Below are positions 1,088 to 60,215 of a stretch of 64,000 nt of DNA, piece by piece. The stretch is taken from positions 1-64,000 of the IMG/VR virus record IMGVR_UViG_3300021964_009390; one strand, given 5' to 3'. The notes beneath the pieces were generated by a model. That model had not been told where the DNA came from. It made no database searches and saw only the letters and a list, made by a program, of their open reading frames with translations. The position numbers and the translations under genes were made by a program. Each line of letters opens with the position of its first letter. Position 1 is the stretch's first letter.

Positions 1088-1532
1088 AGACGAGAGATAC
1101 AAACAAGGGGTGTACCGCCCTATAAACAAAAAATATACCGGTAAGCATTATCCTAAATACAGAAGTAGTTGGGAGTTAAAATTTTTTAGATGGTGTGACC
1201 TGAATCCAAACGTTGTAGAATGGAACAGTGAAAATGTAGTGATACCATATCGTATAGGTAACGGTAAACCTCGCCGATACATAGTTGACAACACTGTGTC
1301 CATGAAACAAAATGGTTGTATCAAGAAATATCTTGTTGAAATCAAACCTTACGCGCAAACACAACCACCCAAACCACATGGAAACAAAAAACGTAGTACT
1401 TTGATATACGAGCAATACACATATGCAAAAAACAAAAGCAAATGGCTTGCTGCGAAACAATGGTGTAGCAAGCACGGTTACCAATTCATGATACTCACCG
1501 AACGCGAGTTATACAACAAGCGTACTAAATAA
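1077..1532 (+). CDS. T4 gp4-like head completion nuclease (TnsA-like fold)
   Basis: YKQGVYRPIN..KY..YRSSWELKFFRWCDLNPNVVEWNSE..IPY and LVEIKPYAQTQPP motifs. Confidence 0.9.
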   Translation: MHHKDERYKQGVYRPINKKYTGKHYPKYRSSWELKFFRWCDLNPNVVEWNSENVVIPYRIGNGKPRRYIVDNTVSMKQNGCIKKYLVEIKPYAQTQPPKPHGNKKRSTLIYEQYTYAKNKSKWLAAKQWCSKHGYQFMILTERELYNKRTK

Positions 1533-1536
1533 TTAT

Positions 1537-1845
1537 ATGAAATATATAATGATAACATGCTTACTTTTGACCGGATGCTTGTCTTCAGTCGTGAAACATC
1601 ATAAATCCGCATCGGTATCCAACGCTACTGTTGAACCTACCGTACCATTTGTAACTAATGTCGAAACGACTTTACCTCGAAACAGCGTCAATCCTGGTAC
1701 ATATGACCTGACAAATGATATTATGTTAATAATTGGTACAATAATCATGCTGATATGTTTCGCACCTCTAATACTATCTTTTCTAGACTATTCAATAGAA
1801 ATTGTTCGTGATAAAATATCGAACTTAATTAACAAGACTAAATAA
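1537..1845 (+). CDS. Putative membrane-anchored lipoprotein
   Basis: Lipobox-like LLLTGC and one C-terminal hydrophobic segment; TAAATA motif upstream. Confidence 0.5.
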   Translation: MKYIMITCLLLTGCLSSVVKHHKSASVSNATVEPTVPFVTNVETTLPRNSVNPGTYDLTNDIMLIIGTIIMLICFAPLILSFLDYSIEIVRDKISNLINKTK

Positions 1846-1849
1846 TTAC

Positions 1850-2281
1850 ATGTTTGGGAGTGTATTAAACACAATTATAGGGGCTGGTATCAAAATAGGT
1901 GCCAACTTAATAAGCGCGTGGATTGAACAACGTAAAGTTGATAGAACATTAATGGCCGCGCGGGATGAAAATATACTCAAGATGATAGCAGAGAGTCAAA
2001 AAGAAACAAGAAGCGACCCGTTTGTAAAAACTACTCGGAGAATATTGTTCTTAGCACTCACATTCACCTACTGTTATTTAATGATATTTTACGCGTTGAA
2101 TCCTGATATAACATACCAAATTGTAAAACCAGCAGACCCCAGCGGTGGTATTTTGAGCTGGTTTTTTGGTGATACACAATGGGTGACATTCAACCTAACC
2201 GGTGGTTTGTTATTAGCAAGTTTTGTTGATTTAATGTTCATGGTTATAGGTTTTTACGCCATTCCTAGTAACAAAAGGTAG
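1850..2281 (+). CDS. Multi-TM membrane protein, holin-like candidate
   Basis: N-terminal amphipathic segment plus two hydrophobic helices. Function is inferred only. Confidence 0.4.
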   Translation: MFGSVLNTIIGAGIKIGANLISAWIEQRKVDRTLMAARDENILKMIAESQKETRSDPFVKTTRRILFLALTFTYCYLMIFYALNPDITYQIVKPADPSGGILSWFFGDTQWVTFNLTGGLLLASFVDLMFMVIGFYAIPSNKR

Positions 2282-2316
2282 TAGTATTTTCCGTTCTCGG
2301 ACTAAATACTCGTATT

Positions 2317-2988
2317 ATGGCATTTAAGTTACTAGTGGAAAAACCTGACATGCACGAGTTTGAATACATTCTCGAGGAGCAAAACGACAAATCAGAAAGC
2401 AATTTGTACGTCTCTGGCCCGTATATGCAATTTGGAGAAAAGAACCGAAACGGTCGAATATACGAAGAACGGGAGATGTGTACTGAAGTGAACCGGTACA
2501 TAAAAGAGATGGTCAATGAAAAAAGATCGTTAGGGGAGCTAAACCACCCCACAAGCGCGGAAGTGAATCCAGAAAAGGCATGTCATATGGTTACTGAGCT
2601 CAAACAAAACGGTAATATATTTTTCGGAAAATCTAAAGTGTTGGGTACACCATGTGGACAAATCATGAGAAGCTTGATAATGGATGGTGTGAAACTTGGC
2701 ATGAGTAGCCGCGCGTTAGGCCAATTGGAAGAAAAGGAAGACGCTAATTATGTTAAAGAAATGAGACTAGTGGCAGTAGATTGTGTAGCAGATCCTAGCT
2801 TTCCAAAAGCTTTTGTGAATGGTATACTAGAAAGTAAAAATTACGTGCTCACACAGGATGGAGGTTTCAGTGAAACTTACGAAGATTTTGAAGCTGGTAT
2901 AAAAAATTTACCAAAAAAAGATCTAGATACATATTTAAAAGAACAAATTTGTATGTTTTTAAATAGAATTAACCAAGTGATTGACTAA
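2317..2988 (+). CDS. Prohead core protease (T4 gp21-like)
   Basis: KNRNGRIY, LGELNHP, GMSSRALG and VDCVADPSFPKAFVNGILE motifs; lies upstream of scaffold and capsid genes. Confidence 0.93.
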   Translation: MAFKLLVEKPDMHEFEYILEEQNDKSESNLYVSGPYMQFGEKNRNGRIYEEREMCTEVNRYIKEMVNEKRSLGELNHPTSAEVNPEKACHMVTELKQNGNIFFGKSKVLGTPCGQIMRSLIMDGVKLGMSSRALGQLEEKEDANYVKEMRLVAVDCVADPSFPKAFVNGILESKNYVLTQDGGFSETYEDFEAGIKNLPKKDLDTYLKEQICMFLNRINQVID

Positions 2989-2998
2989 ATAATTAGTA

Positions 2999-3163
2999 AT
3001 GACAATGAAACCACGTAGCAAAGAAAGAACACACATTGTAAATTTTATCAAAAACTTAAATGAACAAGATTATGCTAATGCTAATCGCTGTTTAAAAAAT
3101 GTTGTTTTCGAAAAGATCCGGAAAAAAATTAGATTAGCCGCTACAAAACCCCTTTTTAATTGA
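2999..3163 (+). CDS. 54-aa small head-cluster protein (possible gp67-like core protein); missing from the ORF track
   Basis: Translated by hand as MTMKPRSKERTHIVNFIKNLNEQDYANANRCLKNVVFEKIRKKIRLAATKPLFN. It fills the gp21-gp22 gap exactly. Confidence 0.55.
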   Translation: MTMKPRSKERTHIVNFIKNLNEQDYANANRCLKNVVFEKIRKKIRLAATKPLFN

Positions 3164-3164
3164 T

Positions 3165-4091: not shown

Positions 4092-4149
4092 TTTTATACG
4101 ATGATGAGGTAGCGATACCTGAGTAACAAGGTCAAGGAGAAAACATAAT

Positions 4150-5706
4150 ATGTCAAAAGTTATTAAACCAACTCAAGCTTATATCGATGAAAGTCGCGCA
4201 AGGGTGTTGCTCGAGAAGTGGGGTCCAGTACTCGACTACAACTCAGCAAATGTAGCACCTATTGAAGATGATCATACACGTCTCAACACAGCCATGCTTT
4301 TGGAAAACCAAGAGTCTTGGTGTTTGAATGAGGCCAATGTAGCAGGTGGAACTGGTGCAGTATTCGGCGGTCCTTCCGCTGGTGCCGGTGCACAAGGTGG
4401 AGTCTTCCCAGGTTCTGGGGACACTGCTTATGCACAAGGTGACGCACGTCTGCCAAAGATCCTCATCCCGATGATTCGTCGTACATTCCCAGAGTTGTTG
4501 ACTAATGAATTAGTAGGTGTTCAGCCAATGAGCGGTCCTGTAGGGCTCGCTTTTGCTTTGCGTTACAAGTACAGCGACACAATGCTTGGAGAGACTAACA
4601 ACAACGGTAAAGACGGAAGTCTTGGATCCGGAGTGTCAGGTCCTGCAGGTACAGACGCGTACAGTGCCGCGGCCGGAAATGCCGGTCCTGGTGGTCGTAA
4701 TGTTCCGGGCAACCTCAATGGTAGCCCAGTCGCTGGTGAACTTGGATATCAATATCTTGATACCCGCTTCACTGGTAAGAGCAGCGCGGCTCTTCAAGGT
4801 TCAGATATCTCCCAAACTTCTGGTACATTCGGGCTCAGCCCCGGGAAAGGTACCGTCAATTGGGACGCATTGAATCAGGACGCTGGTGTAGCAGCTCTCT
4901 TGGGTGAATTCGAATTAGGAAGTAACATTCCTACAATCGAGGTCAGTTTCGAGAAAACAGCTGTTGAAGCCGGAACACGTAGGCTTGCTGCCAACTGGAG
5001 TGTGGAACTCGAACAAGACTTGAAGAACATGAACGGTATCGACATTGATACTGAGCTCACCAACGCGATGAGCTACGAGCTTCAAGCCGAAATCGATCGT
5101 GAGATGATTGTTCGTATGATCCAAACAGCACTTCAAGGAGGAATCGGCAAAGGCTACAGTGCATGGTTTGCTGAAACCGCTGATGGACGTTGGATGGCAG
5201 AACGTAACCGTGACCTTTACGCAAAACTCATCGTTGAAGCAAATCGTATAGCGATCCGCAACCGTCGTGGTGCAGCAAACTTTATTGTTGCTAGCCCGTC
5301 CGTTTGCGCGATACTAGAGATGCTTCCTGAGTTTACATGGATGCCTGTCAATGGTTCCGTCAACACACAACCTGTTGGCGTTGCTAAGGTAGGTAACCTA
5401 GGCGGAAGGTTCAACGTTTACAGAGACACCCGTACTGAGGCTCAAAAGGAACAAGGTTTACGTTCCAATCAAGTCGAGTACGCACTCTTAGGATACAAGG
5501 GACCAGAGTTTTATGATACTGGTATCATATACTGCCCTTACATCCCTGTGATGGTTCAACGCACTATTGGCCCTAACGACTTCAGTCCACGTGTTGGACT
5601 ACTCACCCGTTACGGTGTTGTAGACAACATTTTTGGTGCTGAGTTGTACTACCATGTAGTACTAGTCGGTGGGCTCAAGGGTGGTTTGTCAACAGGACAC
5701 CTCTGA
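4150..5706 (+). CDS. Major capsid protein (T4 gp23-like)
   Basis: LLEKWGPVLD, MLLENQE, ILIPMIRRTFP..GVQPMSGPVGLAFALR, WSVELEQDLK and GIIYCPYIP..GLLTRYG motifs; AAGGAG upstream. Confidence 0.97.
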   Translation: MSKVIKPTQAYIDESRARVLLEKWGPVLDYNSANVAPIEDDHTRLNTAMLLENQESWCLNEANVAGGTGAVFGGPSAGAGAQGGVFPGSGDTAYAQGDARLPKILIPMIRRTFPELLTNELVGVQPMSGPVGLAFALRYKYSDTMLGETNNNGKDGSLGSGVSGPAGTDAYSAAAGNAGPGGRNVPGNLNGSPVAGELGYQYLDTRFTGKSSAALQGSDISQTSGTFGLSPGKGTVNWDALNQDAGVAALLGEFELGSNIPTIEVSFEKTAVEAGTRRLAANWSVELEQDLKNMNGIDIDTELTNAMSYELQAEIDREMIVRMIQTALQGGIGKGYSAWFAETADGRWMAERNRDLYAKLIVEANRIAIRNRRGAANFIVASPSVCAILEMLPEFTWMPVNGSVNTQPVGVAKVGNLGGRFNVYRDTRTEAQKEQGLRSNQVEYALLGYKGPEFYDTGIIYCPYIPVMVQRTIGPNDFSPRVGLLTRYGVVDNIFGAELYYHVVLVGGLKGGLSTGHL

Positions 5707-11064: not shown

Positions 11065-11079
11065 TTTATAATATATACA

Positions 11080-11637
11080 ATGTTAATTAGTTTCACAGGT
11101 GCGCAAAGTACTGGTAAGAGTACACTATTAGAACGTATGGTGAGTGATGTAAAATTTAGAAAATGTTCATTCATCAAAGAAGTTACACGTAAAGTTGCCC
11201 GGCAAGGAGTGAATATAAATGACTCTGGTGACAATATAACTCAGCTATTGATATTATCAGAGCATATAAACAATCATATCATGCGCGGTTGCACGGTTTT
11301 AGATCGGTGCATAGTAGATGGCTTGATATATACTGAATGGTTGTATAATGAAGGCAAAGTAGACAAATGGGTATATGAATATGCTGTCAACTTACACAAC
11401 GCATTATTACCTAAACTAGACATTATATTTTATACAAACCCAGCAGATGTACCATTAGTAAACGATGGTCAGAGGAGCGTGAACAAAGAATTTAGGGAGG
11501 GTATAATACGGCTATACAACGAATATTACGAGTGTAACACTATAGCTAGAGACAAGACTGTAACATTATCAGGCACAGTTGATCAAAGATACAAAACCAT
11601 TACAAACACTTTAAAAAATCATGACACAACTAGATAA
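11080..11637 (+). CDS. P-loop nucleotide monophosphate kinase-like protein (AAA_28/NadR-like)
   Basis: ISFTGAQSTGKSTL Walker A and VLDRCIVD motif. Confidence 0.8.
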   Translation: MLISFTGAQSTGKSTLLERMVSDVKFRKCSFIKEVTRKVARQGVNINDSGDNITQLLILSEHINNHIMRGCTVLDRCIVDGLIYTEWLYNEGKVDKWVYEYAVNLHNALLPKLDIIFYTNPADVPLVNDGQRSVNKEFREGIIRLYNEYYECNTIARDKTVTLSGTVDQRYKTITNTLKNHDTTR

Positions 11638-12535: not shown

Positions 12536-12566
12536 TTAAACATAACTGGAGCTCATAAATAATGTT

Positions 12567-13193
12567 ATGAGTGATGAAGCTAGTATATTACGTACCGGTC
12601 CTTTGCAACCAGTCCAGCCACATGTGACGCGCCGCCGGGAGCGGATGATGGAACAGGACATGTCTGATACCGCGTTCAGACAAGAGCAAGCGATCAAGAA
12701 AAACAAAATAGGTGATGCAACTGCTGTGGTGGCGGACCAAGCAGAGGCCGCGGCGGATGCTGGTACACCGTTTACAAAAAAACAACTCGCCCAAACAGCA
12801 GTGGAGGTGCTTTCTCAGATGAATTTTGAAGTACCGTCTCAATCTGGGAAAATGATCGAACGAGACCCATCACAACAAGGTAGCCAATTTAGTTTACCAG
12901 AATACGGGTATTATATGGATTTGATAGAACTAGCAACAGAGGGTATACCTATTGAGTACCCAAAAGGTAACTTAACAACCAAAGGTGTGAAACCAGAGAC
13001 CCCGGAACGATTCCGGAATGTATTTGAAGGTGGTTTGAAAAAAGCTCGTAACCGGATAAGTGATGACCCGGAATTAAAAGAGGTGTTACCACAATATGTT
13101 AGAGAACAAAAATCCGGCATGCCAGTGCCATTGAGTATACCCAAACTAGACAATTTCACAAGCCTGAACCAATTTATCAACAGACATAGTTGA
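12567..13193 (+). CDS. Hypothetical late protein
   Basis: ORF with a TAAATA motif 5 nt upstream. Confidence 0.6.
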   Translation: MSDEASILRTGPLQPVQPHVTRRRERMMEQDMSDTAFRQEQAIKKNKIGDATAVVADQAEAAADAGTPFTKKQLAQTAVEVLSQMNFEVPSQSGKMIERDPSQQGSQFSLPEYGYYMDLIELATEGIPIEYPKGNLTTKGVKPETPERFRNVFEGGLKKARNRISDDPELKEVLPQYVREQKSGMPVPLSIPKLDNFTSLNQFINRHS

Positions 13194-21308: not shown

Positions 21309-21542
21309 TTTATACTACAGATATATAAATATACACATGGAAATAGATCGTATAGAGGTCAAAAAAATTATTGAACAAGAGGTAAAACCTAATGAAAATT
21401 TAATAGTATGGACAGATGCATATATACGAGGTATAAAAAAAACATTCGATGAGCAAAAATTAGTGTATAATGTGGAGTCAGAAGTTGCTAAACAACGTAT
21501 CATAACGTACGTTATGGAACGTCTAGAAAACGAACTCAGAGA

Positions 21543-22548: not shown

Positions 22549-23297
22549 GGAACGTGGTACAAAATCAATCCGAGCGACCATGTATATCACAGATACAAAC
22601 GCCAATATAGGTACACTATGGATGACACATGAAGAGTTTGAACAATTTCATGATATGTTAACGTTTGGTATGAACGAGACTTGTACATTAGAAGTAGAAG
22701 ATAACATATAGTGATGGACTCACATTTTGAAGTAATACTGGAAAGAGTAAAACAACTTTCCAATGTGACTAATCAGGTTGTATGGTTCGAACTATACAAC
22801 AGCGATTCAAAGACACCTTCAATGATATTGATAAACAAATCGAACACTATAGGACTAATAAATTTAACTTACAAAGGTAAGACCCCAATCCTCACTGGTT
22901 ATCTATTGGGTAAAAATGTATATGATGATTTAGTTGACACTACCATCGCATTTGATCAAGTACGCGATCATACAAAACAAACAACACCTGTACCCAAACT
23001 GATACAAAAGATAGTCAAATCTTAAGGTACGTATATAAAAGTACTAGTTACAGTGTTCCTTGGATGTACACAGGCTTTGAACACTTCTTGGTAACCTAAG
23101 TTCTTCAATCTGATAGATAATGGAAAATAAAATTCATGTTCTACATTGACTAAAATACTCAAGTTACCAGTGTCTAGTACCACGTATCTACAGAATTCTT
23201 CACAAAGCGCCATGGCTCTAGATTCTACATCGGTTATGTTACTATTGTCCATATAACTATTTAGTTTATTTCCGAAAATTAAAGAGTAAATAATCAC

Positions 23298-23834
23298 GTG
23301 AATATTGATACATTTGAACAAAGCATACTAGATGTGTCGGGAATCCGGCAACGTAATTTAATAGTTCCAGCGAAGCTGGCGGCTGAAAAACCAGACACAG
23401 GTGTGAAAATCTTGAAAAAAAGTGCATATTATGTTATAAAGGATTGCGCGAGTATAGCATGTCAGTATGTCACCTTGTTAGCATATGCCAGTTTATCAGA
23501 CCCTATCAAACAACTACAAGGAGCATTCACCCGTGAATCCGTAGAAGATTTCGTCAAAAGATCCAAAGAAGAACATCAAACTAACCAATTGCTCACGTTG
23601 ATATTCGCAGACATTAGCAAATTTGCACCACCCAAAGTCATAATAAACATAGACAAAGGACCGGAGTTTAATTTCAACAACGAAGATGGTCCGTACGGTG
23701 ATTATAATTACGATGGTTATTTGGATCCTGATGATTATGTAGAACATGACCCAGAGGTGGTGATAGAAAAAATTGACATGACAGATGACACTATAGTGAT
23801 ATCAAAATTGTTAGAAATATTTAAAATTAAATAA
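23298..23834 (+). CDS. Hypothetical protein
   Basis: 178-aa ORF with an acidic C-terminus. Confidence 0.55.
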   Translation: MNIDTFEQSILDVSGIRQRNLIVPAKLAAEKPDTGVKILKKSAYYVIKDCASIACQYVTLLAYASLSDPIKQLQGAFTRESVEDFVKRSKEEHQTNQLLTLIFADISKFAPPKVIINIDKGPEFNFNNEDGPYGDYNYDGYLDPDDYVEHDPEVVIEKIDMTDDTIVISKLLEIFKIK

Positions 23835-23853
23835 TTGGAGACTAAATAAACAT

Positions 23854-24033
23854 ATGAGTGAAACACATGAAAATATCTTAGAAGCAATTGATGCTTATCT
23901 AGAAGAAAACGCTAAATTTGAAGAAAAAGGTGTAAAAGCTGCCGCGACTAGGGCGCGTAAAGCTCTTATGGATCTTAAAAATTTGGCGCATGATCGGCGG
24001 AAAGAGATACAGGACAAGAAAAACTCCGGGTAA
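23854..24033 (+). CDS. Small basic histone H1-like/Hc1-type protein (59 aa); missing from the ORF track
   Basis: Translated by hand as MSETHENILEAIDAYLEENAKFEEKGVKAAATRARKALMDLKNLAHDRRKEIQDKKNSG; contains the KG.KAA.TRARKA motif. Confidence 0.75.
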   Translation: MSETHENILEAIDAYLEENAKFEEKGVKAAATRARKALMDLKNLAHDRRKEIQDKKNSG

Positions 24034-26747: not shown

Positions 26748-26896
26748 ACCTAAATAAGTATGTGGATCAGGAAGGGCAAGAGTCGATTGAGCAACTCAAA
26801 AATCAATTGGACAAGCAAAGACAAGAAATACAGTGGTTACAATCTGAGCTCATGAGATATAAAATGTTATTGGAGGGTAAAGATGTGATGATGAAC

Positions 26897-27067
26897 TCAC
26901 TTCCGACCACTAGACCTGATGCGTGACGGTTCAATTTGTATTTTGTTATCTACAATTTTAATTTTAAAACCTTCCGGACTGACATTTTTATAATATTGTA
27001 AATAATGCTTCAAACGATTGAATTTAGGCGCTTCATCACCCTCTACATATTGTCTAAACGATTTCAC
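26897..27067 (-). CDS. Small late protein with MKSFRQYVE N-terminus (GTG start)
   Basis: TAAATA lies 5 nt upstream of the GTG at 27067 on the minus strand. Confidence 0.6.
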   Translation of the reverse strand: MKSFRQYVEGDEAPKFNRLKHYLQYYKNVSPEGFKIKIVDNKIQIEPSRIRSSGRK

Positions 27068-27102
27068 ATGTATATTTATCGACCCAAACAATAAATACTA
27101 TA

Positions 27103-28803
27103 GTGATAACATTCAAAGAGTATGCAAAAACATTACTGAACGAGGTCAAAGACACGCGTCGTAATCGGGAACAGATGATACAATCATACGGTTTGATGGA
27201 TCATGCACCCGAACATGTAGCTCAAGAACGAGCCAAAGAGTTGATAGACAAATTCACAAAATTAGAACCACTCATAGACCCTAATCATGACTATTTTGGT
27301 CTTCCGGGGAAAAAATACAATCCGAAAGATATATTCAGCTGGGCTAGATTATCCAAGGACATGGGGTATGACAAGCTAGAAGCGTTACAAAATTTTGAAG
27401 CGATGTTGATCGATCTAGGTAGAATGTCAGATCGGAAAGAACAAACAAAACTATCTGAAAAAGAATATGATGTATTAGTTGATAATGAACATGCTACTCT
27501 GTATCGCCCCAAGTCGATGGCCGCTAGCTGTAAACTAGGTGCAGGAACAAAATGGTGCACGGCTGCAACTAATAACAACCAATTTGATAGTTACATAGCA
27601 CGAGGTATTGTGTTGTTTTATGCTATAACCAAGCGGAAGAAGTATAACACAGCACAAGCTGTATGGCCACCACAACCCGCTGGGGCCGGTGGCCGTGCAC
27701 CTGGTAGTGATTTCAAGCCGGAGGAGAAATATGCAGTGGCCATGTACCCTGATGGCGAAACATTTGAATTTTTTGATTCTCAAGATTTTGCTATGGATAA
27801 ATCTGACTGGAAGGATGAATTCGCTGCTTTGGAGCTACCAACAGATTTAAATTTTTACAAGAAACATGGCCCATCACCCATATCCTTGCTCCGACAATCT
27901 GCTATTGACGCGCAATCCAAGTTGAGCGGTCAAGTGGCGCGTAGTGAGTTCGATGAAGAGACTAACTGGGAGTTGTTAAATGATGTGTTAGACAGGGTCA
28001 AGAGAATATTCAAGGACCAGGATCCGGAACAAATAGAACAGTTAAAAAAATATCGCGCGGACGAAGGCATGCCGGATGAAGTGTTTTTGATGGATGTGTT
28101 TGATAGCAACTCAATGGAATATTTCACAGACCAGGAATACAACCCACCTGGCAGCAACAACTGGGGCAACGCGCAATTCCAACAGGAGATAGTAAGAAAC
28201 GTCAAGCGATTGACATACTTGACCAAACAATTGAACGACCGTCAAGGATCCGAGGACGATGGTCGTGAGATGGATGACATAAATCGACTGCTATACGGTC
28301 CTAATGACAGTGAAGAGTCTCAAAACCGCATGCACATGTTGATTGGATATGTCGTCAAACACATGAACGGTTCTTGGCCGGAGCTAGAAAAGGCTCTTAT
28401 CGACATGTGGATGACCAATCATGCTTCTACAGACATGGTGGTCGCAGATGGTTACTCTGAACACTCACAACACCCGTTTCAAGACAGCATGATGTGGTTG
28501 AGACTGGTGATGAAATACAAAGATTACAACTGGCCGGAGCTAGAACAAGCTTTACATACACGTATCAAGCAAGTGTTGCATAAAAAACCAGATGATGAGA
28601 ACCTCACACGAGGATTGATAAGCATGGGTAAGTCATTCAACCTGTTGAGCAACATAGGTATCAAAACAACCGAGATGCTTGCTCATGTACCGGAGACAAA
28701 AAATCATCTGTTGAGGTATGCTGGTGGTGAGTGGGATATTGATGGACCACCTTTGACTGACCGAGCCGAGCGAGAGCTCAGATGGCGAAAAACTGGTAGA
28801 TAA
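27103..28803 (+). CDS. Large putative internal virion protein
   Basis: MITFKEY..LLNE N-terminus, ASCKLGAGTKWCTAA motif, late motif 5 nt upstream. Confidence 0.6.
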   Translation: MITFKEYAKTLLNEVKDTRRNREQMIQSYGLMDHAPEHVAQERAKELIDKFTKLEPLIDPNHDYFGLPGKKYNPKDIFSWARLSKDMGYDKLEALQNFEAMLIDLGRMSDRKEQTKLSEKEYDVLVDNEHATLYRPKSMAASCKLGAGTKWCTAATNNNQFDSYIARGIVLFYAITKRKKYNTAQAVWPPQPAGAGGRAPGSDFKPEEKYAVAMYPDGETFEFFDSQDFAMDKSDWKDEFAALELPTDLNFYKKHGPSPISLLRQSAIDAQSKLSGQVARSEFDEETNWELLNDVLDRVKRIFKDQDPEQIEQLKKYRADEGMPDEVFLMDVFDSNSMEYFTDQEYNPPGSNNWGNAQFQQEIVRNVKRLTYLTKQLNDRQGSEDDGREMDDINRLLYGPNDSEESQNRMHMLIGYVVKHMNGSWPELEKALIDMWMTNHASTDMVVADGYSEHSQHPFQDSMMWLRLVMKYKDYNWPELEQALHTRIKQVLHKKPDDENLTRGLISMGKSFNLLSNIGIKTTEMLAHVPETKNHLLRYAGGEWDIDGPPLTDRAERELRWRKTGR

Positions 28804-29103: not shown

Positions 29104-29160
29104 ATCCCCAATATTTATTCTAGACACTATCATTAGCAACTACTTTCAATAAATATACAT

Positions 29161-31646: not shown

Positions 31647-31681
31647 GAAGTTATTTATATACAGCTGTATATCTGTTCAAC

Positions 31682-32221: not shown

Positions 32222-32276
32222 GTTATTATTTATTTAGTTGCACCGGATAACAATATAATATATAATAAATAATTAC

Positions 32277-38318: not shown

Positions 38319-38959
38319 ATAAATAACCTATGTGGTATGTAACCCTCCGCATACTTGCAAGTTCTAGACAACGCACCATTTGAAAGAGCTTTAGAAGTTA
38401 TATAATCCTCCAAAGTTAGTTCATATTTATCGATACCTGCAGCTCCAAGTATTTGAGACCTGTAGAATGACGATATTTTGACTTTGTTACTTAGTTGTGT
38501 ACCATTTAACTCGGTGTATAATGTCGGTACAAATCTCAAGGTTGAAGGTGTCTCGTAGAGTAAAATATTCCGCTTATATCTGCATGCAGCAACTGCCGCC
38601 TGGTTTACTACTAGATGATCCTGGTGCGTGTCTTCATGATATGGTATGAATATATTGTGATAATGATTGTTAGTAACCAGGTTTTGTATAAAAATAATAA
38701 GCGAGTTTAAGTCTTTGTATAACTGTGTATCTACACCACCAGGGTACCTGATATGATTTACTTTGCAACCTAACGTACCGCGTAGCTCATTTACCGCGGC
38801 AATTTCCTCATCAATACGTACCTTGTCAGAAGGTAGCAAATCCTTATTCGCGACCAGTAGTATATCAAATTTATAACGGTCACTATACTTTAAAATATAA
38901 CCACCGCAGCTTATGACAAAGTCGTCCGGGTGCGGGGCAATTATTAAGATTTTATCCAT
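38315..38959 (-). CDS. PIG-L/LmbE family deacetylase
   Basis: IAPHPDD, DTHQDH, YETPST. Confidence 0.9.
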   Translation of the reverse strand: MDKILIIAPHPDDFVISCGGYILKYSDRYKFDILLVANKDLLPSDKVRIDEEIAAVNELRGTLGCKVNHIRYPGGVDTQLYKDLNSLIIFIQNLVTNNHYHNIFIPYHEDTHQDHLVVNQAAVAACRYKRNILLYETPSTLRFVPTLYTELNGTQLSNKVKISSFYRSQILGAAGIDKYELTLEDYITSKALSNGALSRTCKYAEGYIPHRLFI

Positions 38960-38989
38960 GTCGTATTATAGTATATATTGTAGTATGTT

Positions 38990-39631
38990 TCAAGTATGGT
39001 GGATTGAGCTCTCGAATTGGTTTTGAGTCACTATAGTTGGTTCTAACCAATACACATCTAAATCGAGAAACCTAGCTGCTTTGTTCATCCACCAGTCGAG
39101 AGGTAAATATACATGGGTGATTTCATTAGAGAAATGTTCATATAATTTATACGCACATTTTGGTGATATAATGTATGAGTCGGTACAACGTGTACAACCA
39201 TCACCTCCCCATTTTGTGGCATAGTTACACTTTTTATATATGTTAATTCCGGTGGTTTGTTGTTTTAGAGGGATATGTAAATCACAACCATCACCAATAA
39301 ACAACATGTCATAATCCTCCGGTAAAATGTGTGTATATATGTTTAGTTTATTGATAAAATCGTTACATAATTTGACATCATCTTCTAAAATTAACACATA
39401 ATTAGTCTGTTGTAATTTTTGCGAATCCCATATTGATAGATGTTTACAAAAACATGAAATCTCTCCTGGTGACAACTGGTTACTAAATTTACATTTATAA
39501 TTATGAGGTATGTTGTTACAGTCATAGTCGAATACATACTCCCACTCGACATTATATAATTTCAATTGCTCCTCCATATGCGCATGCCGTTCATTAAATG
39601 ATTTACATGTAACTACAAATGTATTATACAT
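38990..39631 (-). CDS. GT25 glycosyltransferase
   Basis: GEISCFCKH, LILEDDV, YIISPKCAYKL, PLDW. Confidence 0.85.
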   Translation of the reverse strand: MYNTFVVTCKSFNERHAHMEEQLKLYNVEWEYVFDYDCNNIPHNYKCKFSNQLSPGEISCFCKHLSIWDSQKLQQTNYVLILEDDVKLCNDFINKLNIYTHILPEDYDMLFIGDGCDLHIPLKQQTTGINIYKKCNYATKWGGDGCTRCTDSYIISPKCAYKLYEHFSNEITHVYLPLDWWMNKAARFLDLDVYWLEPTIVTQNQFESSIHHT

Positions 39632-43407: not shown

Positions 43408-44124
43408 ATGGAGTACAACCCGAAACATCGCAGAAGAACTAGAGAAACAAAAGCATACAACAACAACACTTTTCTGAACAGCAGAGAGGCTCGAAACATC
43501 CGCGTACAATGCGAGGTGATGGAACCGGGAATGAGACTAGATCGGCTAGGAGTTGACAACATGATCACATTTTTCGGAAGCGCCAGAACCAAACCAAACC
43601 ACCCGGATTATATAGACGCGTACAAACTAGCGTACAAACTAGGTACATGGACCAAAAAACATGCACCTACCACAGGTATATCCAGCGGCGGTGGTCCGGG
43701 TATAATGGAAGCCACAAACAAAGGTGCATATGACAGTGGTGCCAAAAGCATAGGGATGGGTATCAGTCTCCCGTTCGAACAGCACAATAACGAATATATC
43801 TCACCTGATTTGGATTTTGAATTCCATTACTTTTTCACTCGCAAATACTGGTGTGTATATTTGAGCAAGGCATATGTGATGATGCCCGGTGGAGTAGGTA
43901 CCATGGACGAGCTGTTCGAGGTGTTGACACTGATACAGACACAAAAAATAAAACAACCCAAACCTATTGTTTTATATAATACAGACTTTTGGAAAAAAAC
44001 TGTGAATTTCTCCCGTATGATTGACCAGGGTACAATAGGTGAGGACGATCTAGAGTTGTTCGAGTATCACGATGACACGCAGACTGCATATGATTATATT
44101 GTCTCAAACATACATTTGACATAA
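43408..44124 (+). CDS. LOG family (TIGR00730-like) nucleotide monophosphate phosphoribohydrolase
   Basis: FFGSART, SGGGPGIMEA, FFTRK, PGGVGTMDELFE. Confidence 0.92.
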   Translation: MEYNPKHRRRTRETKAYNNNTFLNSREARNIRVQCEVMEPGMRLDRLGVDNMITFFGSARTKPNHPDYIDAYKLAYKLGTWTKKHAPTTGISSGGGPGIMEATNKGAYDSGAKSIGMGISLPFEQHNNEYISPDLDFEFHYFFTRKYWCVYLSKAYVMMPGGVGTMDELFEVLTLIQTQKIKQPKPIVLYNTDFWKKTVNFSRMIDQGTIGEDDLELFEYHDDTQTAYDYIVSNIHLT

Positions 44125-44375
44125 ATAACTATGTGACCGCAAAAGGTGAGCCAGTATTTCATATATATTTGATATTCATTTTATGCTGTTTGTGTTACGG
44201 TGGTTGGTCACTGTTCAAGTATATTAAATACATGGAAGATACGATTGAACTCCAGTTAGAAGCTATAGACAAACAGAACCAAGAAAACCAAGCGTTAAAG
44301 AACTACATGCTAATGATGCAGCAATACAATCAATCACCAACACATCGATACCAGCCAACACCTCAGCAATTGTAA

Positions 44376-44879: not shown

Positions 44880-45289
44880 AGTTGCTAATATATATTGTAA
44901 AATTAAATAGATTACAAGATGGAAAAGGAACTTTTAAAAGAAATAAACAAATTAAACCGGCATAAAAATGATATGTACGTGGTCATAGACACGTTGCAAA
45001 CGAACCTCCGGTCAATATGCAGCTATCTCACGAACGAGCAATTGGACGAAGTCAAAACCCCTAGTTACAAATGGTGTGTTGAATGGACCAGAAACGAGTT
45101 AGATGACTAGTTATCAAGACTTGACTGAGATGTGGCGGGACCATATGTATTATGAAGTGGGTAAAACCATACAGTTAGAACAATGGCCACCTCGTAGAGT
45201 GGCTGAGTTTTGTACATATTTTGCTAGGTATATAGGGTTGAAACAACTAGAAACACTGTATAAGTTCATATAGTAGATTAAATAAATAC

Positions 45290-46057
45290 ATGAGCGATCG
45301 AGACGATAAAAAAATATTTGAATCATACACAGACTCCCCGGCTTCAACTCGACCGGGTTCATACATAAGCCGGTTGATACAATCCGCAAAAGACCGAAAA
45401 TCCCGGGGAAGACAGGAAACAGAAACACATAAAGGTTTCAGTTCGGATGACCAACGCGAGGATGATGAACGTGAGATGGAACGTATCATGGCATTGCAAA
45501 AATTCGGTCATGGAGCAGATTACAACACACCATTTGAAGAGACTGACCACAGCAAGGATGACCCGGCATTAGCTCCTGGTGACAAACGTATGAAGGATGG
45601 GAGCGTGGTAGACAAGGATGGTAAAGTGGTGTACAAACCCAAACCAAAAGTTGCCAAAGAGAAGAAAAAGCCGGATGGTGATAGTGATGGAGTGCCGGAC
45701 TGGGCGGACAAACATCATGGTGAAGATGACCATGCTAAGAAAAGAGTGGCTAAAGAAGGTACCAAGGGTACTCGATCAGATCGCGAAAAAGCTGATGTTA
45801 ATGACGATGAAAAAATAGAACCATGGGAAAAGGCCCGGGCGAACGCCATTCGAAAGTCTCAAGGTAAAACGCATTTATGTGCTAAAACAGTGAATCATGA
45901 AAGTTATGGACCAGGTGCCACAATACATGGTCAACACGCCATACCGGACGTGAACGGAAACATCGAGTGGTACATGGTCGAGTTCAAACATGGAACAGAA
46001 AAGGTACGTACAGAAGATGTTGAAGTCGTTTTTGCTGTTGAACATCACCACAATTAA
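45290..46057 (+). CDS. Putative virion protein with Ca-binding DxDxDG-like motifs
   Basis: PDGDSDGVPDWAD and DVNDDEKIEPWE; C-terminal His-rich domain HLCAK..H..QHAIPD..G..EWY.VEF.HG. Confidence 0.6.
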   Translation: MSDRDDKKIFESYTDSPASTRPGSYISRLIQSAKDRKSRGRQETETHKGFSSDDQREDDEREMERIMALQKFGHGADYNTPFEETDHSKDDPALAPGDKRMKDGSVVDKDGKVVYKPKPKVAKEKKKPDGDSDGVPDWADKHHGEDDHAKKRVAKEGTKGTRSDREKADVNDDEKIEPWEKARANAIRKSQGKTHLCAKTVNHESYGPGATIHGQHAIPDVNGNIEWYMVEFKHGTEKVRTEDVEVVFAVEHHHN

Positions 46058-51497: not shown

Positions 51498-51505
51498 TAG
51501 TGTAA

Positions 51506-52874: not shown

Positions 52875-52887
52875 AATAAATAAGTAT

Positions 52888-53418
52888 ATGAGCATAAACC
52901 AAGACACGCAACTAATATGGGAGAATTACAACTATTCATTCGACAAAGATTCCATGATAAATCACGCGGTAAAAATGCACCAGAAACATGGTGCTGGGAT
53001 TGACGAGATAAAAGAAACATTGATGGCTGCGGCGATGTCCGGTGGTCCGGAACAAGCACATCATGTGGCGCAGTATTTAAAAAGTGATGAATTCACTAAC
53101 GAACTTAAAAATCGTTTACAGTCTCTAGATGATGAGATGATGCACGAGGAGCTTGACCGAGGAGACGAAGCTGGTGATTATACTGCGTTTTTGAAGGAGA
53201 TGGCACGAGAGCTGGTGAGAAACGACATGCCGGAGGAGGAAGCAATGGAAATTGTGTTGAGTCATCCATTTGAAGAAACATACGGTGAATATTTGAGAGT
53301 CAGAGGAGCAGCCGGTGTATACACAGCCGCTCAAAAGCACAAAGAACTAGCGGAAAAGTCCGGATATTACCATGAGGTTGACATGAACATGTTACAAAAT
53401 TGGAAGTATGTTAGCTAG
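52888..53418 (+). CDS. Putative virion protein (DTQLIWENY N-terminus)
   Basis: Late motif 5 nt upstream. Confidence 0.6.
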   Translation: MSINQDTQLIWENYNYSFDKDSMINHAVKMHQKHGAGIDEIKETLMAAAMSGGPEQAHHVAQYLKSDEFTNELKNRLQSLDDEMMHEELDRGDEAGDYTAFLKEMARELVRNDMPEEEAMEIVLSHPFEETYGEYLRVRGAAGVYTAAQKHKELAEKSGYYHEVDMNMLQNWKYVS

Positions 53419-54383: not shown

Positions 54384-54396
54384 AATAAATATATGT

Positions 54397-54918
54397 ATGT
54401 TAGAACGATTCGATAATCTATATGAAAAGCACCTTCCGGAGGAAAAAAAGAAAGGTTTAGACGGCAAAGCATGTTGGAAAGGATATCGACAACAGGGCAC
54501 CAAAAAGAAGGGTAACAAAACTGTCGACAACTGCGTGAAGGTCGGTGAGGGTTTATGGGCCAATATAAACAAGAAAAATAAGTCCGGTCGTAAATCAGCC
54601 AGCAAAGGAAGCAAAGCCTACAAAGCCGCTGTCAAAGCCGGAGACAAGCTAGAAGCCACCAAGGAAAGTATTGCTGCTGAGAAAAATGCACAATGCACTG
54701 GACCTACTAAAAAAGCCAGTAGCACCAGCAAAGGTAAAAAATGGATGAAATGTGTGAAAAGTGACAGCGGTGGTTACAAACGTATACACTGGGGTCAAAA
54801 AGGAGTCAAAGTGAGCGGCAAAGCAAACACCAAAAGACGTAAAAGCTTCAGAGCTCGTCACAAATGTAGCACGGCCAAAAGCAACACACCACGCGGACAA
54901 GCATGCAAGGACTGGTAG
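54397..54918 (+). CDS. Basic modular putative virion protein
   Basis: CWKGY..GTKKKG..VDNCV and GLWANIN modules; Lys-rich. Confidence 0.65.
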   Translation: MLERFDNLYEKHLPEEKKKGLDGKACWKGYRQQGTKKKGNKTVDNCVKVGEGLWANINKKNKSGRKSASKGSKAYKAAVKAGDKLEATKESIAAEKNAQCTGPTKKASSTSKGKKWMKCVKSDSGGYKRIHWGQKGVKVSGKANTKRRKSFRARHKCSTAKSNTPRGQACKDW

Positions 54919-57604: not shown

Positions 57605-57667
57605 TGATTAGACCAAGTTTAATTAATACTATAAATAGTATGGAAAAAAATTGCAATATCACTTGAA

Positions 57668-58390: not shown

Positions 58391-58496
58391 AAACATTTAA
58401 ACAATATTAGATATGAAATACAAATTTACAAAAAATTGGTTCGATGACTCAGCAATAAAAAAAATAACATATAAGTTGCGGATTAGTCAAAATACC

Positions 58497-58504
58497 TATA
58501 AATA
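58497..58504 (+). promoter_or_regulatory. Canonical T4-type late promoter TATAAATA upstream of DUF1501
   Basis: Exact match, 8 nt before the ATG. Confidence 0.6.
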
Positions 58505-58512
58505 TATAGTAT

Positions 58513-59781
58513 ATGAATGATTTAAGCCGCCGCGAATTTGTAAGTACAGTTGCCAAAAGCTGTTTAGGAGTGAGCGCCATACTGAGCGCTCAAGATTTAT
58601 TAGCAATCAAACCCACCGGGCAGATACCAACCGCTCGGAATGTTATATTTTTATACATGGCAGGAGGCATGACTCACATCGACACGTTCGACCCAAAACC
58701 GGAGAACAGTGACGTGATGGGTGAAACAACTGCCATTGACACTACAGCGGACGGGGTACAGATAGGCAACTGGTTACCCAACACCGCCAAACAGATGCAC
58801 AACGCAAGTTTGATACGTACATTGTCGTCCAATCAAGGTGCACATGCACAAGCCAACTATTTGTTACACACCAGCTACCAACGCCGCGGCACGATCGTGC
58901 ATCCAACCATGGGTGCATGGGTGAGCAAACAGACACCCAAACTGAATCGATCGTTACCATCTAACGTGAGAATCAACGGAGGTAGCGACATATTAGGTTC
59001 CGGTTATTTGGAGAAAAAACACGGACCGTTACCATTGGGTAACCCCAACGCAGGTATACAAAATGTGTCACAGGCCAAGTATCTGGACGAGACCATGTAC
59101 AACAAACGGATGGACATATCCAGCAAATTCAACAAAAATTTCTTAGACATGTTCCCACAAAAGCAAGTACGTGCATACACTGATTTATATGATGATGCCA
59201 TCCGGTTGATGAAAAGCACAGATCTTGAAGCGTTCGATCTGACAAAAGAAGACCAAGCCACTCGAGACATGTACGGTACCAACAGTTTTGGTCAGGGCTG
59301 CCTATTAGCTAGACGGTTGGTTGAGACTGGTGTACGTTATGTCGAGGTGCAGCTAGGTGGTTGGGACATGCACAACGATGTGTTTGGTAACATGGAGACA
59401 CGAGGTGCTACATTGGACAATGGATTGGCTTCGTTGTTACAAGATTTGAACCGTCGTGGTCTGTTGAGCTCCACACTAGTTGTTGTGGCGAGTGAATTTG
59501 GTCGTACACCAGAGGTCAAAGCAGGCCGCGTGGGACGTGACCATCACCCATCTGCATTCAGCGCCATGTTGGCCGGAGGAGGAGTCAAAGGAGGTTACGT
59601 ACATGGCAAGAGCGACAAGCGTGGTCACTATGTAGAAGAGAAAGGTGTGAAAATGGAAGATCTGAACGCCACGATTGCTTACATGATGGGAATGGACATC
59701 ACTGAAACAATCTATTCTCCAAGTGGCAGACCATTTAAAATTGCTAATGCGGGTGAGGTTGTAACTGACATTTTAGCATAA
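58513..59781 (+). CDS. DUF1501 protein with twin-arginine (Tat) signal
   Basis: LSRREFV, VIFLYMAGGMTHIDTFDPKP, FGQGCLLARRLVETGV..VEV..GGWD.H, SEFGRTP, GRDHHP, GGGVKGG..G.SD. Confidence 0.93.
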   Translation: MNDLSRREFVSTVAKSCLGVSAILSAQDLLAIKPTGQIPTARNVIFLYMAGGMTHIDTFDPKPENSDVMGETTAIDTTADGVQIGNWLPNTAKQMHNASLIRTLSSNQGAHAQANYLLHTSYQRRGTIVHPTMGAWVSKQTPKLNRSLPSNVRINGGSDILGSGYLEKKHGPLPLGNPNAGIQNVSQAKYLDETMYNKRMDISSKFNKNFLDMFPQKQVRAYTDLYDDAIRLMKSTDLEAFDLTKEDQATRDMYGTNSFGQGCLLARRLVETGVRYVEVQLGGWDMHNDVFGNMETRGATLDNGLASLLQDLNRRGLLSSTLVVVASEFGRTPEVKAGRVGRDHHPSAFSAMLAGGGVKGGYVHGKSDKRGHYVEEKGVKMEDLNATIAYMMGMDITETIYSPSGRPFKIANAGEVVTDILA

Positions 59782-59789
59782 ATAATGAC

Positions 59790-60215
59790 ATGCACGACAA
59801 AGACCACCACCTGATATGGGAATCATATTTTGATGAGACTGTAGCCACACCTAAAAACATTGAACGTGTGAGGTCCACATTGAACGATCCGGACCTGCAA
59901 GAACATGAACGACAGCTCATAATAGACACGTTACGCGAGCTAGAGAGACTAGCCACAACACAAGACATCAAAACTGTCAAGCAGAGCATCATGGACAAGC
60001 TGGGCAAGATGCTAGGACGTGAGCGAGTCAATGAACAGGGTAACTATGCCCGGATTGTGGCGGATGAAGAAAAGTTTTTAGAAATAGCGTACAAGTATTA
60101 CGGAGACATGGAAGAAGCCGAGCTGAAATTCCACCACTATGTACTGGAGGAGTTGCTAGAGATGGACGAGCTGACACGTCGCGAGTATCAAGGCCAAGGA
60201 CCACAGCGAGACTAA
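59790..60215 (+). CDS. Putative virion protein (DHHLIWESY N-terminus)
   Basis: Late motif 5 nt upstream. Confidence 0.6.
   Translation: MHDKDHHLIWESYFDETVATPKNIERVRSTLNDPDLQEHERQLIIDTLRELERLATTQDIKTVKQSIMDKLGKMLGRERVNEQGNYARIVADEEKFLEIAYKYYGDMEEAELKFHHYVLEELLEMDELTRREYQGQGPQRD

What the first reader, a model, noticed from the sequence alone, without database searches (positions are those of the whole stretch)
1525..59790. TAAATA late-promoter motif exactly 5 nt before start codons and before the tmRNA: a leaderless late programme
Seen: TAAATA is followed by exactly 5 nt and then the start at 1537, 1850, 12567, 23854, 26762 (GTG), 27103 (GTG), 29161, 44133 (GTG), 52888, 54397 and 59790. The same holds on the minus strand at 27067 (GTG), 31646 and 32221, and at the tmRNA 5' G (32277). 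Spacing is 7-8 nt at 2317, 2999 and 58513. Known: T4 gp55-dependent late promoters are TATAAATA with +1 about 5-6 nt downstream. Inference: +1 coincides with the start codon, so many late mRNAs are leaderless, with no room for a Shine-Dalgarno. The tmRNA, whose 5' end is defined independently of translation, supports the spacing. The capsid gene is an exception with AAGGAG.
Basis: partly seen in the sequence, partly recalled or inferred. Interest (0 to 1): 0.78.

Follow-up and report, generated by a model that had tools for sequence, protein, structure and literature searches.

The report
Phage promoters placed directly against start codons
An uncultured 222-kb T4-like aquatic phage, and a wide clade of its relatives, place their late promoter box (TAAATA) and their early promoter box (TATAAT) at exactly the distance that should make RNA polymerase start on the first base of the start codon. 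Most of their messages, and a tmRNA, are therefore predicted to have no 5' leader.

Summary
In the window, TAAATA sits exactly 5 nt before 18 gene starts (13 ATG, 5 GTG, 0 TTG) and before the mature 5' G of the tmRNA. No other offset among the 40 nt before a start has more than 3 sites (Poisson P about 3e-26).

The T4 late box TATAAATA spans -13 to -6, so +1 falls on the first base of the start codon. T4 and cyanophage S-SM2 controls show no such spacing.

The pattern recurs in 638 kb of relatives with 65-71% capsid identity: 83 sites at N5, background 12 or fewer. There the box precedes virion genes (gp21, gp13, gp15, gp4) and lacks a -35 element.

A second class, TATAAT exactly 6 nt before starts and with a TTGAnA -35 element, precedes nucleotide-metabolism and replication genes. 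In this genome it precedes DNA polymerase and the gp41-like helicase.

The same genome encodes a gp55 late sigma, outside the window, next to uvsW and gp47. Shine-Dalgarno sequences are scarce.

No transcript 5' ends could be mapped, so leaderlessness remains an inference.

The parts
1526..1539 (+). TAAATA-N5-ATG of a 102-aa gene in the gp67 position of the head module
   Evidence: Box and spacing are conserved in relatives L002 and L003.
1839..1852 (+). TAAATA-N5-ATG of a 143-aa gene in the gp68 position
   Evidence: Box and spacing are invariant in 7 relatives while the upstream 3' coding region diverges. Third-codon-position variation begins at codon 2.
2303..2319 (+). TAAATA-N8-ATG of the gp21 prohead protease (predicted 3-nt leader)
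   Evidence: The sixth base after the box is a conserved A. In more distant relatives gp21 is N5 in 17 loci.
2986..3007 (+). TAAATA followed by a small gene whose conserved start is 3005 (N13), not 2999
12556..12569 (+). TAAATA-N5-ATG, 208-aa gene
21326..21339 (+).
23250..23263 (-).
23287..23300 (+).
23843..23856 (+). TAAATA-N5-ATG, 59-aa gene
26751..26764 (+). TAAATA-N5-GTG, 54-aa gene
27065..27078 (-). TAAATA-N5-GTG (start 27067). Only 35 nt separate it from the divergent start at 27103.
27092..27105 (+). TAAATA-N5-GTG, 566-aa gene
29150..29163 (+). TAAATA-N5-ATG, 92-aa gene
31644..31657 (-). TAAATA-N5-ATG (start 31646), 729-aa glycosyltransferase
32219..32232 (-). TAAATA-N5-ATG (start 32221), 179-aa gene, divergent from the tmRNA
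32266..32660 (+). TAAATA-N5 followed by the tmRNA, whose mature 5' G is at 32277 and whose 3' CCA is encoded
   Evidence: ARAGORN. Rfam RF00023 at 90.3 bits, covering model positions 1-374 from 32277. The relative L131 has TAAATA-N4-GGG directly after a stem-loop followed by a T run that I read as an intrinsic terminator.
44122..44135 (+). TAAATA-N5-GTG, 80-aa gene
45279..45292 (+).
52877..52890 (+). TAAATA-N5-ATG, 176-aa gene
   Evidence: JGI calls the same start.
54386..54399 (+). TAAATA-N5-ATG, 173-aa gene
58499..58515 (+). TAAATA-N8-ATG of the DUF1501 gene
59779..59792 (+). TAAATA-N5-ATG, 141-aa gene
38957..38993 (-). Sigma-70-type promoter TTGAAA-17-TATAAT-N5-ATG (start 38959): early-class promoter abutting a start codon
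43374..43410 (+). Sigma-70-type promoter TTGACT-17-TACAAT-N5-ATG (start 43408)
11067..11082 (+). TATAAT-N7-ATG of thymidylate kinase. Its orthologues in relatives are TATAAT-N6.
4093..4152 (+). The exception: major capsid gene with a roughly 57-nt leader, a conserved hairpin at 4108-4119 and AAGGAG at 4134-4139

Best explanation
The window is the first 64 kb of a 222-kb T4-like phage. Its host is probably an SD-poor marine Verrucomicrobiota bacterium. (A/C)TAAATA is the -10-type box of late promoters read by host RNA polymerase core carrying the phage's gp55-like sigma. The box occupies -11..-6, as in T4, so transcription starts at the sixth base after it. In most late transcription units that base is the A or G of the start codon. 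The mRNA therefore begins with AUG or GUG and has to be translated without a Shine-Dalgarno sequence, presumably by direct binding of the 5'-terminal start codon by initiator-tRNA-loaded ribosomes. The tmRNA is made the same way, so its primary 5' end would be its mature 5' end and no RNase P cut would be needed. Early and replication genes follow the same rule with the host sigma-70-type promoter: TTGAnA, 17 bp, TATAAT, then 6 nt to the start codon. Shown here: motif, spacing, conservation, functional partition, the gp55 gene. Inferred: the actual start sites, gp55 dependence, timing and mode of translation.
For: Spacing peak in the window: 18 at N5 against 3 or fewer elsewhere. In 181 kb of this genome: 29 at N5 against 8 or fewer. 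In 638 kb of relatives with 65-71% capsid identity: 83 at N5 and 44 at N6, with 28 at N9 and 12 or fewer at every other spacing. T4 box geometry (-13 to -6) comes from PMC2988020. T4 and cyanophage S-SM2 controls have no site closer than 9 nt. +1 is always a purine, TTG starts are absent, and -1 is a pyrimidine in 17/18 (P 2e-4). The spacer is almost free of G, like the AT-rich melted segment of T4 late promoters. In the N7 and N8 sites of relatives the sixth base is a purine in 12/13 and 8/10, so the geometry follows the box, not the ATG. The tmRNA 5' end lies at the same spacing. Divergent start codons lie only 35-55 nt apart, and that space is filled by two boxes. Box and spacing stay invariant while flanks diverge, and codon-type variation starts at codon 2. 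Across relatives' loci, N5 genes include the prohead protease, neck, head-closure and sheath-stabiliser genes; several other N5 families have no known function. In this phage's own upstream sequence the portal and a 781-aa ORF sit at N6-N7 and the gp13-like gene at N5. A de novo scan finds only one other sharp signal, TATAAT at N6. It has a -35 match in 23/34 sites against 10/85 for TAAATA sites, and it precedes thymidylate kinase, helicase, the RNR small subunit and GTP cyclohydrolase. In this genome it precedes DNA polymerase and the gp41-like helicase. The gp55 homologue scores E 2e-31 to PHROG 'late sigma transcription factor', is 32% identical to S-SM2 gp55, and lies in the syntenic uvsY-uvsW-gp55-gp47-gp46 position. 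SD-like 4-mers occur before 9/91 genes against 6.3% of random 16-nt windows.
Against: gp33 and gp45 were not recognised in the 181 of 222 kb examined. Five of 18 N5 starts are GTG, and from my own knowledge leaderless GUG messages translate poorly in E. coli, although Shell et al. report them to work in mycobacteria (PMC4633059; listed, not read). The most abundant late protein, the capsid, uses a long leader with AAGGAG, so SD-led initiation also works in this host. Start-site choice by RNA polymerase can wander by 1-2 nt, which would destroy a 5'-terminal start codon. A small sample of Verrucomicrobiota DNA showed no -10 box next to gene starts.
Confidence: 0.68

Rival explanations
1. TAAATA is an RNA-level translation signal, a non-SD ribosome-binding or A/U-rich enhancer element at a fixed distance from the start codon, inside longer transcripts whose promoters lie elsewhere.
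For: The phage and its likely host are SD-poor, so some other initiation signal is needed. The dominant feature is constant spacing to the start codon. No start-site data exist.
Against: The same box at the same spacing precedes the tmRNA 5' end, which is not a translation start. When the ATG is 7-8 nt away, the conserved purine stays at the sixth base after the box. The box matches the T4 late promoter in sequence and position, lacks a -35 element and marks virion genes, and a gp55 sigma is encoded. A second motif that is plainly a promoter (TTGAnA-17-TATAAT) shows the same behaviour at its own canonical distance. Divergent gene pairs leave no room for other promoters.
Confidence: 0.1
2. TAAATA is a late promoter, but transcripts start 1-3 nt away from the start codon, or translation starts at downstream in-frame codons. 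The messages would then have short leaders or long untranslated 5' parts and would not be truly leaderless.
For: N6 (44), N9 (28) and N7-N8 classes exist in relatives and in this phage (gp21 N8, portal N6), so short leaders of 1-4 nt are tolerated. T4 start sites were partly defined by primer extension, with known caveats.
Against: N5 is by far the modal class. Purine at +1 and pyrimidine at -1 fit initiation on the start codon. Synonymous-type variation begins directly after the ATG in alignments of relatives. Independent gene callers pick the same starts.
Confidence: 0.17
3. The pattern is a by-product of AT-rich composition or of stop codons (TAA inside TAAATAA) of closely packed upstream genes.
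For: In several cases the upstream gene's TAA stop overlaps the box (1530-1532, 1843-1845, 23832-23834). TAAATA as a word is not over-represented overall (102 found against 84 +/- 9 expected).
Against: Shuffles give a mean of 0.2 sites at N5 against 18 observed. Many sites have no upstream gene on the same strand (27067/27103, 23252/23298, 32221/tmRNA). T4 and cyanophage, which are equally AT-rich, lack the peak.
Confidence: 0.02

Closest known systems
Bacteriophage T4 late promoters (gp55 sigma, gp33 co-activator, gp45 clamp)
   Same: An A/T box (TATAAATA in T4, mostly AATAAATA or ACTAAATA here) at the -10 position. No -35 element. An AT-rich segment downstream. Placement before virion genes on either strand. 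A gp55 homologue is encoded.
   Different: In T4 and in cyanophage S-SM2 the box lies 9-58 nt from the start codon, leaving a leader with an SD. Here it lies exactly 5 nt away. T at -13 is not conserved. gp33 and gp45 have not yet been found.
'-10 region adjacent to ORF' leaderless genes of Deinococcus-Thermus (PMC12340547), and of Actinobacteria
   Same: A -10 element a few bp before the start codon, no SD, and a predicted 5'-terminal AUG or GUG. The TATAAT-N6 early class here is the same design.
   Different: Those are cellular sigma-A promoters. Here a phage-encoded alternative sigma class shows the design as well, in a host phylum for which I know of no report of leaderless expression (own knowledge; no search for such a report was made).
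Thermus phage phiYS40 middle and late transcripts (Sevostyanova et al. 2007; cited in PMC12340547; content recalled from memory, the paper was not readable here)
   Same: A large phage whose middle and late promoters lack -35 elements and whose transcripts are reported to be largely leaderless.
   Different: It is not T4-like and has no gp55. It uses host sigma-A with phage modifiers, and its host phylum is known to be rich in leaderless genes.
Leaderless tRNA transcription in organisms lacking RNase P (Nanoarchaeum; recalled from memory, a lead only)
   Same: A promoter at a fixed distance, so that the primary 5' end equals the mature 5' end of a tRNA-like RNA, as predicted here for the tmRNA.
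   Different: That is an archaeal promoter and a different RNA. It is untested here.

Membership tests
T4-type (gp55-dependent) late promoter | TATAAATA-like box about one helical turn upstream of +1, with no conserved -35 element | tested here: met
   Logo from 79 distinct N5 sites in relatives: A at 53/79 and 59/79 for the two bases before TAAATA. The best -35 match is 4 of 6 or better in only 10/85 sites.
T4-type (gp55-dependent) late promoter | AT-rich segment between the box and +1 | tested here: met
   G makes up 6 of 90 spacer bases in the window against 52 of 365 at the same positions of other genes. G is nearly absent in the clade logo.
T4-type (gp55-dependent) late promoter | The phage encodes a gp55 sigma | tested here: met
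   A 159-aa protein at L306:6953-7429(-), about 160.7-161.2 kb of the same contig and outside the window. PHROG 'late sigma transcription factor' E 2e-31, 32% identity to S-SM2 gp55, located between uvsW and gp47.
T4-type (gp55-dependent) late promoter | gp33 co-activator and gp45 sliding clamp are encoded | tested here: inconclusive
   Neither was recognised in 181 of 222 kb by tblastn with S-SM2 gp45 or by PHROG scans of candidate ORFs. 41 kb was not seen, and no gp33 query sequence was available.
T4-type (gp55-dependent) late promoter | Precedes late (virion and morphogenesis) genes | tested here: met
   gp67/68-position genes, gp21, portal and gp13-like in this phage. gp21, gp13, gp15 and gp4 in relatives.
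T4-type (gp55-dependent) late promoter | Initiation in vivo depends on gp55 and occurs late | not testable with these tools
   The phage is uncultured and no time-resolved RNA data exist.
Leaderless mRNA | Primary 5' end at, or within a few nt of, the start codon | not testable with these tools
The only RNA-like contigs obtained cover the capsid gene, which has a leader.
Leaderless mRNA | Promoter -10 element at its canonical distance from the start codon, with no room for an SD | tested here: met
   TAAATA at N5 and TATAAT at N6, each a sharp peak.
Leaderless mRNA | The start codon can serve as the initiating nucleotide (purine first base) | tested here: met
   13 ATG, 5 GTG and 0 TTG in the window. 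66 ATG, 17 GTG and 0 TTG in relatives.
T4-like phage (T4 core gene set) | T4-type capsid and replication core genes | tested here: met
   gp23, gp21, gp22 and gp4 in the window. gp20, gp15, gp43, gp41-like, gp46, gp47, UvsX, UvsY, UvsW, NrdA and NrdB elsewhere in the genome.
tmRNA (Rfam RF00023) | Covariance-model score above gathering, tRNA-like acceptor stem with a G3:U pair, and a tag reading frame | tested here: met
   90.3 bits against a gathering score of 47, full-length match from 32277. The 5' GGGCCUG pairs with CAGGUCC, giving G3:U. ARAGORN reads a tag of 27 residues ending in LLAA.

The most novel reading that the evidence does not exclude
A whole, environmentally widespread clade of T4-like phages, marine and freshwater, has given up 5' untranslated regions for most genes. 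The host sigma-70 holoenzyme and the phage gp55 holoenzyme both start on the first base of the start codon, GUG included, and even a phage tmRNA is made without 5' processing. This would imply that the hosts, probably Verrucomicrobiota, translate leaderless AUG and GUG messages efficiently. I know of no report of such a property for that phylum.
Probability: 0.55. Interest if true: 0.72.

Novelty: new variant of a known kind. Interest (0 to 1): 0.64.

Why it matters
T4 late transcription and leaderless translation are each well studied, but I found no report that combines them. If the prediction holds, gene starts in this large uncultured phage group can be read straight from two promoter boxes, and early and late genes can be told apart from sequence alone. 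The probable hosts would also be expected to translate leaderless messages well. The tmRNA offers an independent, translation-free marker of the start site. The claim can be tested directly on existing metatranscriptomes by mapping read 5' ends.

Tried and rejected
- **RNA reads.** It still counted, so no read-level evidence was possible.
- **Nearest phages.** A megablast of 26-36 kb against GenBank phages found nothing. The best capsid hits are cyanophages at 33% identity.
- **Relatives of the 566-aa gene.** IMG/VR returned only the contig itself.
- **L011.** This 35% gp21 relative has in-frame stops and was dropped.
- **gp55 and gp45 in the window and near relatives' capsid genes.** No hits. 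gp55 was then found by walking the contig with all 12 look-ups. gp45 and gp33 were still not found.
- **A TAAATA promoter for the capsid gene.** Some relatives have TAAATA across the gp22 stop codon, but it is the codons GGT AAA TAT TAA (G-K-Y-stop). It varies synonymously, and the window has TAAGTA, so it is not a conserved promoter.
- **Other phage tmRNAs.** Of 118 viral matches to the tmRNA 5'-end pattern (some are chance matches, not tmRNAs), only this contig has N5 and one relative has N4.
- **Host signal.** 328 kb of Verrucomicrobiota loci show neither a -10 box next to starts nor an SD peak. The sample is too small to be conclusive.
- **Sigma-70 consensus scan of 20-36 kb.** Not enriched over shuffles (66 against 61).
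- **The phiYS40 paper.** It could not be read.


Full report
**What the window is.** The window is bases 1-64000 of IMG/VR contig IMGVR_UViG_3300021964_009390, also filed as JGI Ga0222719_10000014. The contig is 222,461 bp and comes from estuary or marine metagenomes. GC content is 39%.

It is a distant T4-like phage. The window carries:
- a gp23-type capsid gene at 4150-5706, at most 34% identical to cyanophage capsids;
- a gp21 prohead protease at 2317-2988, a gp22-like scaffold at 3165-4091 and a gp4-like head-closure gene at 1077-1532;
- many accessory genes: a ClpB-like ATPase, PrkA/DUF444/SpoVR, glycosyltransferases, and DUF1549/1553 with DUF1501;
- a tmRNA at 32277-32660.

**The observation.** Scoring every TAAATA on both strands against the next start codon that opens an ORF of at least 40 aa gives 19 at a 5-nt spacing. 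Every other spacing from 0 to 30 has 0-4.

With a curated list of 91 gene starts, 18 have the box at -11..-6, and no other offset within 40 nt exceeds 3. The Poisson P is 3e-26, and 5000 shuffles of the upstream regions gave a mean of 0.2 and a maximum of 4.

JGI's own gene calls pick the same starts where they could be compared. Alignment with relatives moves the start of the small gene from 2999 to 3005.

**Geometry.** The T4 review states that the 8-bp late box begins at -13. TAAATA is therefore -11..-6, and the sixth base after it is +1, which is exactly the base that opens the start codon here.

Several further features fit initiation by RNA polymerase:
- The base at +1 is always a purine (13 ATG, 5 GTG, no TTG).
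- The base at -1 is a pyrimidine in 17 of 18 sites, against 39 of 73 in other genes (P 2e-4).
- The 5-nt spacer is almost free of G.
- The tmRNA gives a test that does not involve translation. Its mature 5' G, defined by the acceptor stem with a G3:U pair and by a full-length Rfam match, is also the sixth base after a TAAATA.
- Three divergent pairs (23252/23298, 27067/27103, 32221/tmRNA) have start points only 35-55 nt apart. Two boxes fill that space and leave no room for other promoters or leaders.

**Controls.** In 50 kb of T4 and 50 kb of cyanophage S-SM2, both covering the structural genes, TAAATA lies 9-58 nt before starts and never 5 nt. About 970 kb of unrelated viral contigs show only a weak N5 excess. 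Much of that excess comes from a few loci, two of which (L122, L075) share genes with this phage.

**Conservation in close relatives.** In ten relatives with 78-90% gp21 identity, the box and its spacing before the orthologues of 1537 and 1850 are invariant, while the preceding coding sequence diverges strongly. Third-position variation starts at codon 2. gp21 keeps an 8-nt spacing with a conserved A at the sixth base.

**Conservation in distant relatives.** A capsid-based scan of metagenome contigs returned 80 loci. One is the same phage (L215), 12 have 77-88% capsid identity, and 67 have 65-71% identity and come from marine and freshwater samples.

In those 67 loci (638 kb) the spacing histogram has 83 sites at N5, 44 at N6 and 28 at N9, with 12 or fewer elsewhere. 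N5 starts are 66 ATG, 17 GTG and 0 TTG. The logo is AATAAATA, four A/T-rich bases, a pyrimidine, then the purine. In the N7 and N8 classes the sixth base is still a purine (12/13 and 8/10) preceded by T, so the conserved geometry belongs to the box and not to the ATG.

**A second promoter class.** A hexamer-by-offset scan of the relatives, made without prior assumptions, found one other sharp signal apart from a repeated block from one orthologous upstream region: TATAAT exactly 6 nt before starts. There are 34 such sites, against 8 or fewer at other offsets. This is the canonical -12..-7 position for sigma-70 promoters, and it again puts +1 on the start codon.

These sites carry a TTGAnA-like -35 element at 16-18 bp in 23 of 34 cases, against 10 of 85 for TAAATA-N5 sites.

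**Functional split between the two classes.**
- TAAATA-N5 precedes gp21 (17 loci), the gp13 adaptor (12), the gp15 sheath stabiliser (9), gp4 head closure (6) and a protein weakly similar to tape-measure proteins; several other N5 families have no known function.
- TATAAT-N6 precedes thymidylate kinase (8), a DNA helicase (4), GTP cyclohydrolase, the RNR small subunit and others.

**The rest of this genome.** I walked the contig with 12 exact-protein look-ups and joined the pieces with zero mismatches, giving 175.5 kb plus 5.9 kb upstream of the window.
- TAAATA shows 29 sites at N5 and 8 or fewer at other spacings.
- TATAAT shows 14 sites at N6 and 5 or fewer at other spacings. These include DNA polymerase gp43 (a GTG start), the gp41-like helicase, a 534-aa helicase, GTP cyclohydrolase I and PTPS.
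- Upstream of the window, a 781-aa ORF, the portal gene and the gp13-like gene carry the box at N7, N6 and N5.

Within the window the early class is less crisp. Examples are 38959(-), 43408 and 11080.

**gp55.** No homologue lies in the window. At about 160.7-161.2 kb of the same contig there is a 159-aa gene between uvsW and gp47/gp46, which is the position gp55 holds in cyanophages. It matches the PHROG 'late sigma transcription factor' at E 2e-31 and is 32% identical to S-SM2 gp55. gp45 and gp33 were not recognised in the DNA examined, and 41 kb remains unseen.

**Translation context and host.** SD-like 4-mers precede 9 of 91 genes, against 6.3% of random 16-nt windows. Only a few genes have a clear SD. 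The capsid gene is one: it has a conserved leader of about 57 nt with a hairpin and AAGGAG.

The DUF1501 protein's best cellular homologues (49-58% identity) are marine Opitutia/Puniceicoccaceae MAGs, and some of those loci have 40% GC. A survey lists members of Verrucomicrobia among SD-scarce organisms (PMC10783764). Host assignment rests on this one gene family and is tentative. A small sample of Verrucomicrobiota loci gave no signal for or against leaderless genes.

**Interpretation.** The simplest reading is that two RNA polymerase holoenzymes each start on the first base of the start codon: host sigma-70 type for early genes and gp55 type for late genes. This would give leaderless messages throughout the programme and a tmRNA that needs no 5' trimming.

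Three rivals were considered. The chance or composition artefact is excluded by the statistics. The RNA-level translation signal is disfavoured by the tmRNA, by the behaviour of the N7/N8 sites, by the -35 contrast between the two classes and by gp55. Short leaders, or starts at downstream codons, remain possible for a minority of genes.

**Comparison with known systems.** Each component is known: T4 late promoters, and -10 boxes abutting ORFs that produce leaderless messages in Deinococcus-Thermus (PMC12340547). Actinobacteria and phage phiYS40 are further examples that I recall from memory. Literature searches found no description of T4-type late promoters fused to start codons. I therefore rate this a new variant of a known kind, present across a large uncultured clade.

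Noticed in passing
window 4093-4152; L216-L294 upstream of the capsid gene: The capsid leader has a conserved layout across the clade: a hairpin (GAGG...CCUGA; GGUAGCGAUACC at 4108-4119 here), often GGUCGA, then an SD. Many 1.5-1.8-kb contigs that look like assembled transcripts begin 28-70 nt before the capsid ATG, in or near that hairpin. This suggests a stable 5' stem-loop or a processing site. The capsid promoter itself was not identified.
   Followed up: partly
window 129-782; L215:5473-6633: The first ORF of the window is the C-terminal part of a 386-aa gp13-like neck gene that starts upstream of the window, itself with TAAATA-N5-ATG. The portal gene lies just before it.
   Followed up: yes
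window 2999-3163: The conserved start of this small gene is 3005, not 2999. Relatives lack the first ATG.
   Followed up: yes
window 32277-32660; L131:194-595: The phage tmRNA encodes an unusually long tag, 27 residues ending in LLAA. A relative's tmRNA appears to encode an even longer one (my reading of the sequence; ARAGORN did not call it) and is followed directly by a DUF1501 gene.
   Followed up: partly
window 49004-51052 and 58513-59781: The DUF1549/DUF1553 and DUF1501 proteins are typical of Planctomycetes and Verrucomicrobia. The best cellular homologues of DUF1501 are marine Opitutia MAGs, which hints at the host.
   Followed up: partly
window 14893-19690: A PrkA kinase, DUF444 (YeaH-like) and SpoVR-like gene trio is carried by the phage.
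   Followed up: no
window 5766-8228 (-): An 820-aa ClpB/ClpA-like AAA+ protein lies immediately after the capsid gene on the opposite strand.
   Followed up: no
window 24605-24645: A perfect sigma-70 consensus promoter (TTGACA-16-TATAAT) ends 12 nt before the ATG at 24645. This early-type promoter would give a leader of about 5 nt rather than none.
   Followed up: partly
window 29457-31646, 53415-54614, 61079-63945; contig 64-75, 93-100 and 126-139 kb (L295-L304): The genome carries a very large set of glycosyltransferase, sulfotransferase, APS kinase and sugar-nucleotide genes, which suggests extensive modification of a glycan.
   Followed up: no
L298:15748-15966 (about 88.9 kb of the contig): A 72-aa protein with a weak Sigma70_r4/HTH match lies in a block of small, probably early genes. 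It could be a transcription factor.
   Followed up: no
L215 against the window: A second assembly of the same phage, Ga0222718_10000012, is 228,717 bp against 222,461 bp, and it continues 5.85 kb upstream of window base 1. This is consistent with a circularly permuted or terminally redundant genome. It was not verified.
   Followed up: no
L122, L091, L075, L112, L034: Some other viral contigs that matched the tmRNA 5'-end pattern also show 2-3 TAAATA-N5-ATG/GTG sites each. L122 and L075 share genes with this phage, so the trait may reach beyond the capsid-defined clade.
   Followed up: partly
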